Assembly: GCF_963921235.1 (NCBI RefSeq) | Contig: NC_086105.1 | Coordinates: 119,164,001-119,228,000 of the forward strand | Length of the DNA stretch: 64,000 nt | DNA from: Mobula hypostoma | Taxonomy: Eukaryota | Direction of reading: 5' to 3' | Part shown: one piece after another, positions 8,863 to 9,071 of the stretch | Layout of the letters: each line of letters begins with the position of its first letter | Numbering within the stretch: position 1 is the stretch's first letter | Position numbers and translations under genes: made by a program | Notes under the pieces: model-generated | Databases searched by the model: none | What the model saw: only the letters and a program-made list of their open reading frames with translations | What the model was told of the DNA's origin: nothing

Positions 8863-9071
8863 ACCAACATACATCAAAGTTGCTGGTGAACGCAGCAGGC
8901 CAAGCAGCATCTGTAGGAAGAGGTGCAGTTGACGTTTCAGTCCTGACGAAGGGTCTCGGCCTGAAACGTCGACTACACCTCTTCCTACAGATGCTGCTTG
9001 GCCTGCTGCGTTCACCAGCAACTTTGATGTATGTTGCTGGAATTTCCAGCATCTGCAGAATTCCTGTTGTT
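8863..9071 (+). mobile_element. Non-autonomous Penelope-derived fold-back mini-element (family A), 209 bp
   Basis: 14-bp TSD AGTGTTGTAATCCA (8849-8862 and 9072-9085); 76-nt inverted arms 8865-8940 and 8961-9036 with 2 mismatches. Confidence 0.9.
8939..8974 (+). ncRNA. Minimal type I hammerhead ribozyme, intact core
   Basis: AGTC-CTGACGA-AGGgtctcggCCT-GAAAC-GTC^GACT: stem I AGTC/GACT, CUGANGA at 8943-8949, stem II, GAAA at 8963-8966, predicted cleavage after C8970. Confidence 0.8.

What the first reader, a model, noticed from the sequence alone, without database searches (positions are those of the whole stretch)
8863..9071. Young 209-bp retro-mini-element places an intact, self-caged hammerhead ribozyme in sense within the RBFOX1 pre-mRNA
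Seen: a perfect 14-bp TSD, 76-nt inverted arms with only 2 mismatches, and a full hammerhead core on the transcribed strand (AGTC-CUGACGA-stem II-GAAAC-GUC^GACU, 8939-8974). The left arm is complementary to the GAAACGUCGACU half, so the long hairpin leaves only CUGACGA in a 20-nt loop and excludes the ribozyme fold. Known: Penelope-like elements carry minimal hammerheads with a tiny palindromic stem III, thought to need dimerisation. Inference: this is a non-coding, retrozyme-like unit whose 5' inversion cages its own ribozyme. That could let it be tolerated in sense introns, or make cleavage conditional on editing, unwinding or pairing with another copy.
Basis: partly seen in the sequence, partly recalled or inferred. 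Interest (0 to 1): 0.85.

Follow-up and report, generated by a model that had tools for sequence, protein, structure and literature searches.

The report
Fold-back Penelope retrotransposon fragment in intron
A 209-base insertion in an intron of a ray's RBFOX gene is an ordinary, dead-on-arrival fragment of a Penelope-like retrotransposon: two head-to-head copies of the element's end form a hairpin that buries its small hammerhead ribozyme motif, and that hairpin is best read as a by-product of how these elements integrate, not as a switch.

Summary
A perfect 14-bp target-site duplication flanks 8863-9071, the arms are near-perfect inverted copies (78 positions, 3 mismatches), and a full minimal type-I hammerhead core lies at 8939-8974 on the + strand. 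RBFOX-family exons on either side are also on the + strand. A related species carries the exact empty site, so this is one young insertion.

It is not a special unit. It has the published signature of Penelope-like element (PLE) integration: a 5'-truncated copy, an adjacent inverted 5'-truncated copy, and a 33-nt "tail" at one end only. The tail-less arm starts at the position where hundreds of family contigs in two species end (9038), and the other arm ends at the second common terminus (9071).

A second, older mini fold-back of the same plan (24996-25209, 13-bp duplication) lies antisense in the same window, so the arm does not depend on orientation.

The hairpin does exclude the ribozyme fold (+26 kcal/mol). 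That fold is already disfavoured without the arm, and single PLE hammerheads showed no cleavage in published tests. No evidence supports adaptive or conditional caging.

This scan has flagged hammerhead-bearing Penelope elements many times in this genome. Interest is low: a new member of a known kind.

The parts
8849..8862 (.). left copy of the 14-bp target-site duplication
   Evidence: Perfect direct repeat with 9072-9085. A single copy is present at the empty site of organism B (record 25).
8863..8940 (-). inverted, 5'-truncated, tail-less copy of the PLE 3' region (reverse complement of 8961-9038)
   Evidence: 78 positions, 3 mismatches. Its outer end corresponds to 9038, one of the two termini at which family contigs end genome-wide.
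8935..8940 (+). junction of the two copies. TTTCAG fits both the inverted arm and the native sequence upstream of the hammerhead (microhomology of 3-6 nt)
   Evidence: Family copies read CTTTCCAG or CTTTTCAG before GTCC. The loose-end consensus before 8938 ends in CCTTTC. The mini-element at 25140 carries TTTC and CTTTC side by side.
8939..8974 (+). minimal type-I hammerhead motif. Helix I AGUC/GACU, core CUGACGA and GAAA, palindromic ACGU in place of helix III, predicted cut after C8970
   Evidence: Read from the sequence. Single match to the pattern, none expected by chance. No family variant at 10% or more inside 8939-8974, while 8975-9039 varies (table 3).
8941..9038 (+). forward 5'-truncated PLE copy, body up to the proximal terminus
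   Evidence: 72-82% identical to seven other family tails in the window. Summed contig depth is about 5 million against 16 in the flanks.
9039..9071 (+). 33-nt PLE 'tail' extension, present on this side only
   Evidence: Family contigs end at 9038 (121 and 139 contigs) and at 9071 (147 and 135 contigs) in organisms A and B (table 7). This matches the 30-40 bp tail described in PMC8557442 and the two RT start sites of PMC11167929.
9072..9085 (.). right copy of the 14-bp target-site duplication
24983..25222 (-). second, older mini fold-back of the same plan. Perfect 13-bp duplication (24983-24995, 25210-25222), inverted tail-less arm, hammerhead motif with decayed CpG, 35-nt tail. Antisense to the RBFOX gene
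   Evidence: and alignment A1

Best explanation
The 209-bp unit is one integration event of a very high-copy Penelope-like element (PLE) family in a ray genome. It consists of two 5'-truncated copies of the element's 3'-terminal region joined head to head. The forward copy (8939-9071) carries the hammerhead motif and the 33-nt tail. The inverted copy (8863-8940) lacks the tail. Shown here: single 14-bp duplication, exact empty site in a related species, family membership, two discrete family termini, and an arm that ends on one of those termini. Inferred mechanism: the PLE endonuclease nicked both target strands 14 bp apart, and each 3'-OH primed reverse transcription, one from the distal start site and one from the proximal. 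Both cDNAs stopped around the hammerhead. Their 3' ends, naturally complementary there (TTTCAG against CTGAAA), annealed and were filled in. The hammerhead is included only because it lies within the last ~135 nt of every PLE copy. Its sense orientation in the RBFOX intron is a coin toss. In the pre-mRNA the unit should fold into a 78-bp hairpin in which G12 to C17 and helix I are base-paired, so the motif is inert. The most likely biological effect is none.
For: The TSD is perfect and the arms are near-perfect. Organism B has a precise empty site (record 25). Seven other family tails lie in the window. Family contigs in two species end at 9037/9038 and at 9071, and their loose letters there are T-rich with low agreement, as flanking DNA would be. 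The left arm starts at the 9038 equivalent, directly against the TSD. The second mini-element starts at the same GTTGCT terminus. That element is antisense and has the same architecture and a 13-bp TSD. Literature: PLE insertions often have an adjacent inverted 5'-truncated copy and a 30-40 bp tail at one end (PMC8557442). The anole PLE protein cuts and extends both strands and starts reverse transcription at two adjacent internal sites that define the tail (PMC11167929). PLE min-hammerheads lack helix III, work as dimers if at all, and single motifs show no detectable cleavage (PMC4209133). Energetics: the hammerhead-competent fold costs +26 kcal/mol with the arm and +4.6 to +6.0 without it.
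Against: No reverse transcriptase or GIY-YIG domain was detected by Pfam in any open frame near the longer family copies. The only hints are a GIY-YIG-like motif at 27809-28000 (-) and a weak atlas lead. The PLE assignment therefore rests on structural signatures and the ribozyme motif, not on a linked ORF. Dual-strand priming cannot be told apart here from snap-back synthesis followed by endonuclease trimming. Both fold-backs in the window turn at the hammerhead, which may point to a preferred stop that is not yet understood. No locus-specific RNA data exist, because the RNA contigs do not cover the flanks.
Confidence: 0.85

Rival explanations
1. Same single PLE event, but made by snap-back. 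One cDNA primed at the right-hand nick was copied to just upstream of the hammerhead. Its 3' end folded back on the internal complementary TTTCAG/CTGAAA and copied itself. The far end was then trimmed at the tail boundary and joined to the upstream target.
For: The arm covers the same stretch as the forward copy, unlike the L1 twin-priming pattern (established knowledge) in which the inverted segment comes from a different, non-overlapping part of the RNA. The turn sits at a natural 6-nt self-complementary site. PMC8557442 attributes the one-sided tail to endonuclease-mediated resolution of the intermediate.
Against: Self-copying should run through the tail into target DNA and give symmetrical arms. 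In both mini-elements the arm instead stops at the proximal family terminus. In the second mini-element TTTC and CTTTC stand side by side instead of overlapping, which does not fit annealing-primed snap-back.
Confidence: 0.25
2. The fold-back is itself a non-autonomous, retrozyme-like or SINE-like mobile unit. It would be transcribed and retrotransposed as a ~210-bp hairpin by PLE enzymes.
For: Two units of nearly the same length (209 and 214 bp) and plan lie in one 64-kb window. Other first-stage notes in this genome mention tiny hammerhead-centred palindromes (untested).
Against: The two units belong to different subfamilies, and each matches ordinary long copies in both arms (table 3). Their junctions differ by 5 nt. 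Most family contigs continue upstream of 8938 into canonical PLE sequence. The notes describe a size series from about 100 bp to 3 kb, which fits variable truncation. There is no tandem arrangement at this locus, and tandem arrangement defines non-LTR retrozymes (PMC7229834, bioRxiv 10.64898/2026.07.22.740005).
Confidence: 0.07
3. The inverted arm is kept because it cages the ribozyme, allowing survival in sense introns or making cleavage of the RBFOX pre-mRNA conditional on editing, unwinding or a partner copy.
For: The hairpin does bury G12-C17 and helix I, at a cost of +26 kcal/mol. The core and the palindromic ACGU are intact on the transcribed strand.
Against: The insertion is absent from a sister species, so there is no conservation to speak of. 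The arm is explained by the integration mechanism and also occurs on an antisense copy. Intactness follows from youth: all older copies in the window, in both orientations, have lost core bases or the CpG of ACGU. Lone PLE min-hammerheads are essentially inactive (PMC4209133), and the anole one needs its own protein (PMC11167929). The helix II closing pair here is G-U or A-U, not the conserved G-C. No RNA evidence exists.
Confidence: 0.03
4. A DNA transposon of the MITE type with terminal inverted repeats.
For: Inverted arms flanked by a direct duplication.
Against: The arms are not terminal on the right, where a 33-nt one-sided extension follows. A 14-bp duplication is longer than cut-and-paste families usually make (2-10 bp, established knowledge). 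Both arms are copies of a retroelement tail that mostly occurs singly and 5'-truncated.
Confidence: 0.01

Closest known systems
Penelope-like element insertions with an adjacent inverted 5'-truncated copy and a one-sided 30-40 bp tail (Evgen'ev and Arkhipova 2005; Craig et al. 2021, PMC8557442)
   Same: 5' truncation, head-to-head inverted copy, a 33-nt tail at one end only, a 13-14 bp duplication, and a hammerhead in the terminal region.
   Different: An extreme miniature. Both copies are truncated at the hammerhead, so the whole insertion is 209 bp and non-coding. The host is a cartilaginous fish, and no linked RT/EN reading frame was verified here.
Anole Poseidon PLE (PAc) in vitro integration (Frangieh et al. 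2024, PMC11167929)
   Same: Two adjacent reverse-transcription start sites that define the tail. Extension from both target strands would give exactly one tailed and one tail-less end, head to head. The hammerhead lies about 70-100 nt upstream of the start sites.
   Different: Only the genomic products are seen here. No biochemistry was done, and the target does not show a clear ATT cut-site preference.
Minimal PLE hammerheads (Cervera and de la Pena 2014, PMC4209133; Lunse et al. 2016 as cited in PMC6765202)
   Same: Type I, short helix I (4 bp), no helix III loop, palindromic 15.2-16.2 (ACGU), and an extra base after A9.
   Different: The pair closing helix II is G-U (with the bulged A) or A-U (without it), not the highly conserved G10.1-C11.1. 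Activity is untested.
Non-LTR retrozymes of animals (Cervera and de la Pena 2020, PMC7229834; Li et al. 2026 preprint 10.64898/2026.07.22.740005)
   Same: Non-coding, PLE-related, hammerhead-bearing.
   Different: Retrozymes are direct tandem repeats that yield circular RNAs after double cleavage. This locus has one hammerhead and an inverted partial copy, not a direct one.
LINE-1 5' inversions by twin priming (established knowledge)
   Same: An inverted 5' segment created during a single retrotransposition event between one pair of duplications.
   Different: In twin priming the inverted part comes from a different, more 5' stretch of the RNA. Here both arms copy the same stretch, giving a true palindrome.

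Membership tests
Penelope-like element (insertion signature) | Optional 30-40 bp tail, i.e. two discrete 3' termini in the family | tested here: met
   Family contigs in two species end at 9037/9038 and at 9071, 33 nt apart. Window copies with and without the tail appear.
Penelope-like element (insertion signature) | Inverted 5'-truncated copy directly adjacent at the 5' end, within one target-site duplication | tested here: met
   The same is seen at 24983-25222.
Penelope-like element (insertion signature) | Hammerhead motif in the terminal (pLTR) region | tested here: met
   8939-8974. Homologous motifs, mostly decayed, occur in the other copies.
Penelope-like element (coding capacity of the family) | Full-length members encode a telomerase-like RT and a GIY-YIG endonuclease | tested here: inconclusive
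   No Pfam hit in open frames between 25.2 and 30.6 kb. A CxxC..YIGET-like motif lies at 27809-28000 (-). The atlas gives a weak GIY-YIG lead with scores of 0.88-0.90. The genome beyond the window could not be searched.
Hammerhead ribozyme, minimal type I of PLEs | Core C3 U4 G5 A6 N7 G8 A9 ... G12 A13 A14 A15.1 ... U16.1 H17, with helix I flanking | tested here: met
   CUGACGA, GAAA, ACGU, C17, and helix I AGUC/GACU of 4 bp.
Hammerhead ribozyme, minimal type I of PLEs | Conserved G10.1-C11.1 pair and an extra base between 9 and 10.1 (PMC4209133) | tested here: not met
   With A8950 bulged, the closing pair is G8951-U8962. Without the bulge it is A8950-U8962. Neither reading gives G-C.
Hammerhead ribozyme (Rfam covariance models) | Match to a curated hammerhead model | tested here: not met
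   No hammerhead family matched at the gathering score or at E up to 10. This is expected for a motif without a helix III hairpin.
Hammerhead ribozyme | Self-cleavage after H17 | not testable with these tools
   Only assembled RNA contigs were available, none covers the flanks, and no ends are reported at 8970/8971.
Non-LTR retrozyme | Two or more direct tandem units, each with a hammerhead, able to release a circular RNA | tested here: not met
   One hammerhead, and the second copy is inverted and lacks the CUGANGA half.
MITE / cut-and-paste DNA transposon | Symmetrical terminal inverted repeats reaching both ends, and a short fixed-length duplication | tested here: not met
   A 33-nt one-sided extension and duplications of 14 and 13 bp.

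The most novel reading that the evidence does not exclude
The 78-bp sense-strand hairpin is a working part of the RBFOX pre-mRNA. It would be a double-stranded RNA substrate for editing or dicing, and its melting would expose an intact hammerhead able, with a partner copy or the PLE protein, to cut the pre-mRNA between two alternatively used exons. A milder and likelier version concerns the element only. In that version the natural TTTCAG/CTGAAA complementarity around the hammerhead is the preferred place where cDNAs from both target strands are joined, so these mini fold-backs are natural records of dual-strand priming by a PLE.
Probability: 0.03. Interest if true: 0.7.

Novelty: new member of a known kind. 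Interest (0 to 1): 0.2.

Why it matters
As a biological switch it most likely does not matter: it is a neutral, lineage-specific intronic insertion. Its value is as a clean natural specimen. The exact empty site, the single duplication, one tailed and one tail-less end, and a junction at a natural microhomology together mirror, in a cartilaginous fish genome, what was seen in vitro for an anole PLE (both strands extended, two start sites). A genome-wide census of such fold-backs could help settle how PLEs make their inverted repeats, which the PLE literature still lists as unresolved. For annotation, it warns that 'intact hammerhead in a sense intron' in PLE-rich genomes mostly reflects the youth of a copy, not its function.

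Tried and rejected
- Rfam at gathering score on the whole window, and at E up to 10 on 8700-9250, gave no hammerhead. The only hits were generic hairpin matches to miRNA models, far below their thresholds.
- Pfam on 14 open-frame pieces between 25.2 and 30.6 kb gave nothing, so the 'protein-coding Penelope parent' noted for 24983-28870 is not confirmed.
- RNA evidence could not be obtained. All six RNA runs are kept only as assembled contigs. They hold the repeat family at high depth but show zero depth in the unique flanks, so transcription of this intron, RNA ends at 8971 and editing could not be examined. One 'RNA' run is flagged as probably DNA.
- Strand-change joints genome-wide were barely informative. 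Short contigs gave only a few (8940/8976, 8940/8982), so the frequency of fold-backs could not be measured.
- Earlier-findings look-ups by several word sets returned only first-reader titles and no tested results on fold-backs.
- Two independent adjacent insertions were considered and rejected, because there is only one duplication and none at the internal junction.
- A later inverted duplication of a simple copy was considered and rejected, because the arm abuts the duplication exactly and ends on a family terminus.
- A MITE was considered and rejected, because of the asymmetry, the long duplication and the retroelement family membership.
- A cis 'half-dimer' was considered, in which the left arm's ACGU would supply helix III. 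The topology does not close a three-way junction, because the arm lacks CUGANGA and GAAA and its next bases are helix I itself.

Full report
**What is in the sequence.**
- AGTGTTGTAATCCA occurs at 8849-8862 and again at 9072-9085. The repeat is perfect and cannot be extended.
- Between the two copies lie 209 bases. Positions 8863-8940 are the reverse complement of 8961-9038: 78 positions with three mismatches, at 8864, 8926 and 8930.
- Positions 9039-9071 have no partner.
- On the + strand, 8939-8974 reads AGTC, CTGACGA, a 13-nt helix II segment, GAAAC, GTC, GACT. This is the full conserved hammerhead core, with a 4-bp helix I and the palindrome ACGU where helix III should be.
- A search for CTGANGA, a gap, then GAAACGTC finds only this site in 64 kb, against none in shuffles.
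- No Rfam hammerhead model scores, even at E up to 10. That fits a motif without a helix III hairpin.
- As RNA the unit folds into one long hairpin of -164.9 kcal/mol, z -25.5.

**Context.**
- RBFOX-type exon pieces are on the + strand. The RRM piece at about 2650-2745 matches RBFOX1 and RBFOX2 structures at E about 3e-16.
- Further pieces are [12 protein letters not shown]... at about 4252-4305 and [19 protein letters not shown] at about 14158.
- The element is therefore sense-intronic. From my memory of the human paralogues the last exon fits RBFOX1 best, but that was not tested.

**It is one young insertion.**
- A 2,308-letter DNA contig of a related species (organism B; flanks about 1.6% different) lies on 8300-8848 and continues without any intervening letter on 9072-9700 (table 8, record 25). 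This is the exact empty site with one copy of the 14-mer.
- In organism A, contigs run from both flanks into the element (records 1 and 8).

**It belongs to a very high-copy family.**
- Summed contig depth on the element is about 5 million, against about 16 in the flanks, in both species. The family is also abundant in RNA-labelled libraries.
- Seven further tails lie in the window, at 1112-1198, 10103-10137, 19935-19958, 20151-20268, 24997-25132, 27414-27436, 30262-30349 and 34484-34606 (19935-19958 and 20151-20268 may be parts of separate copies). They occur in both orientations.
- All older copies have lost core bases or the CpG of ACGU. Intactness here simply reflects youth.
- Family contigs show no variant at 10% or more within 8939-8974, whereas 8975, 8976, 8988, 8998, 9031 and 9039 vary (table 3). 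The motif therefore appears conserved among source copies.
- At 8975 the family has G, as the left arm implies, so the right arm mutated there. The left-arm mismatch at 8930 is a CpG transition.

**Why this is ordinary Penelope behaviour.**
- Family contigs end at two discrete places: 9037/9038 (121 contigs in A, 139 in B) and 9071 (147 and 135). Beyond those points come T-rich, low-agreement letters, as flanking DNA would give (table 7). The 33 nt between the two termini correspond to the published 30-40 bp PLE tail.
- Frangieh et al. show that an anole PLE protein cuts and extends both target strands. It starts reverse transcription at two adjacent internal sites whose spacing is the tail. 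Its hammerhead is protein-assisted and is not needed for insertion (PMC11167929).
- In this element the forward copy ends at the distal terminus (9071). The inverted copy starts, directly against the duplication, at the proximal terminus (the 9038 equivalent).
- The junction TTTCAG (8935-8940) fits both the arm and the native sequence upstream of the hammerhead, a microhomology of 3-6 nt.

**A second specimen.**
- At 24983-25222 on the - strand lies an older unit with a perfect 13-bp duplication. It has an inverted tail-less arm starting at the same GTTGCT terminus, the hammerhead region, and a 35-nt tail; the insert is 214 bp (alignment A1).
- It belongs to another subfamily, its junction differs by 5 nt, and it is antisense to the gene.
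- The arm therefore forms regardless of orientation, and the two units are independent events, not copies of a fold-back master.

**The cage.**
- Forcing helices I and II with an open core costs +26 to +27.5 kcal/mol in the full unit. It already costs +4.6 to +6.0 without the left arm, because the native UUCAG/CUGAA pairing competes.
- The exclusion is real, but it is the trivial consequence of a perfect palindrome.
- Cervera and de la Pena found no detectable cleavage for a single PLE min-hammerhead and only low activity for dimers (PMC4209133). Tolerance in a sense intron therefore needs no cage.
- The pair closing helix II here is G-U or A-U, not the conserved G-C, which is a further reason for caution about activity.

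**Mechanism, graded.**
- Shown: a single event, family identity, two family termini, an arm that ends on a terminus, and the junction microhomology.
- Inferred, my weight about 0.55: both target strands primed cDNA synthesis, one from each start site, and the two cDNA 3' ends annealed at the natural complementarity and were filled in.
- Alternative, about 0.25-0.3: snap-back self-copying with endonuclease trimming at the tail boundary.
- Not explained: why both specimens turn at the hammerhead, and why many family contigs diverge exactly at 8939/8940 (168 and 58 contigs in A).

**What could not be done.**
- No raw RNA reads were available, and the RNA contigs do not cover the flanks.
- Pfam found no RT or endonuclease domain near the longer copies. 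Only a GIY-YIG-like motif and a weak atlas lead were found.

**Verdict.** This is a textbook miniature of a PLE insertion in a ray. The scan has flagged hammerhead-bearing Penelope elements in this genome many times (405 findings hold both words; fold-back titles).

Noticed in passing
window 24983-25222 (- strand): A second mini fold-back PLE insertion with a perfect 13-bp duplication and the same plan as the finding. It is older (arms about 79% complementary) and antisense to the RBFOX gene.
   Followed up: yes
window 27809-28000 (- strand): An open frame with a CxxC...LLYIGETRHRF motif that resembles a PLE GIY-YIG endonuclease, about 370 nt upstream of a decayed family hammerhead at 27414-27436. 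Pfam finds nothing and the atlas gives only a weak GIY-YIG lead.
   Followed up: partly
family-wide, laid on window 8938-8974 (DNA contigs of organisms A and B): 'Goes back' joints from 8972-8974 to 8938-8940, with 0-4 letters between. Some genomic copies therefore carry the 35-37-nt hammerhead unit in direct tandem, the arrangement that dimer-dependent hammerheads need.
   Followed up: no
family-wide, laid on window 8939-8940: Many family contigs (168 and 58 in organism A) diverge into low-agreement sequence exactly at the 5' edge of the hammerhead. Most listed joints from inverted pieces also land at 8938-8945. This suggests a preferred 5' end of copies there. It is unexplained.
   Followed up: partly
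family-wide, laid on window 9065: Organism B, but not A, shows a further cluster of 45 contigs ending at 9065. This may be a species-specific third terminus.
   Followed up: no
window 5008-5445: Nested inverted repeats (arms of 50-64 nt, 90-94% complementary) form a ~440-bp hairpin-like element in the same intron. It is unrelated to the PLE tail and may be a MITE.
   Followed up: no
window 61102-61916: An inverted repeat with 135-nt arms (84% complementary) separated by 545 nt. It was not examined.
   Followed up: no
window 2650-2745, 4252-4305, 14158-14214 (+ strand): RBFOX-family exon pieces: two RRM pieces and the [19 protein letters not shown] exon. They fix the gene's strand. The paralogue is not resolved by the RRM.
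   Followed up: partly
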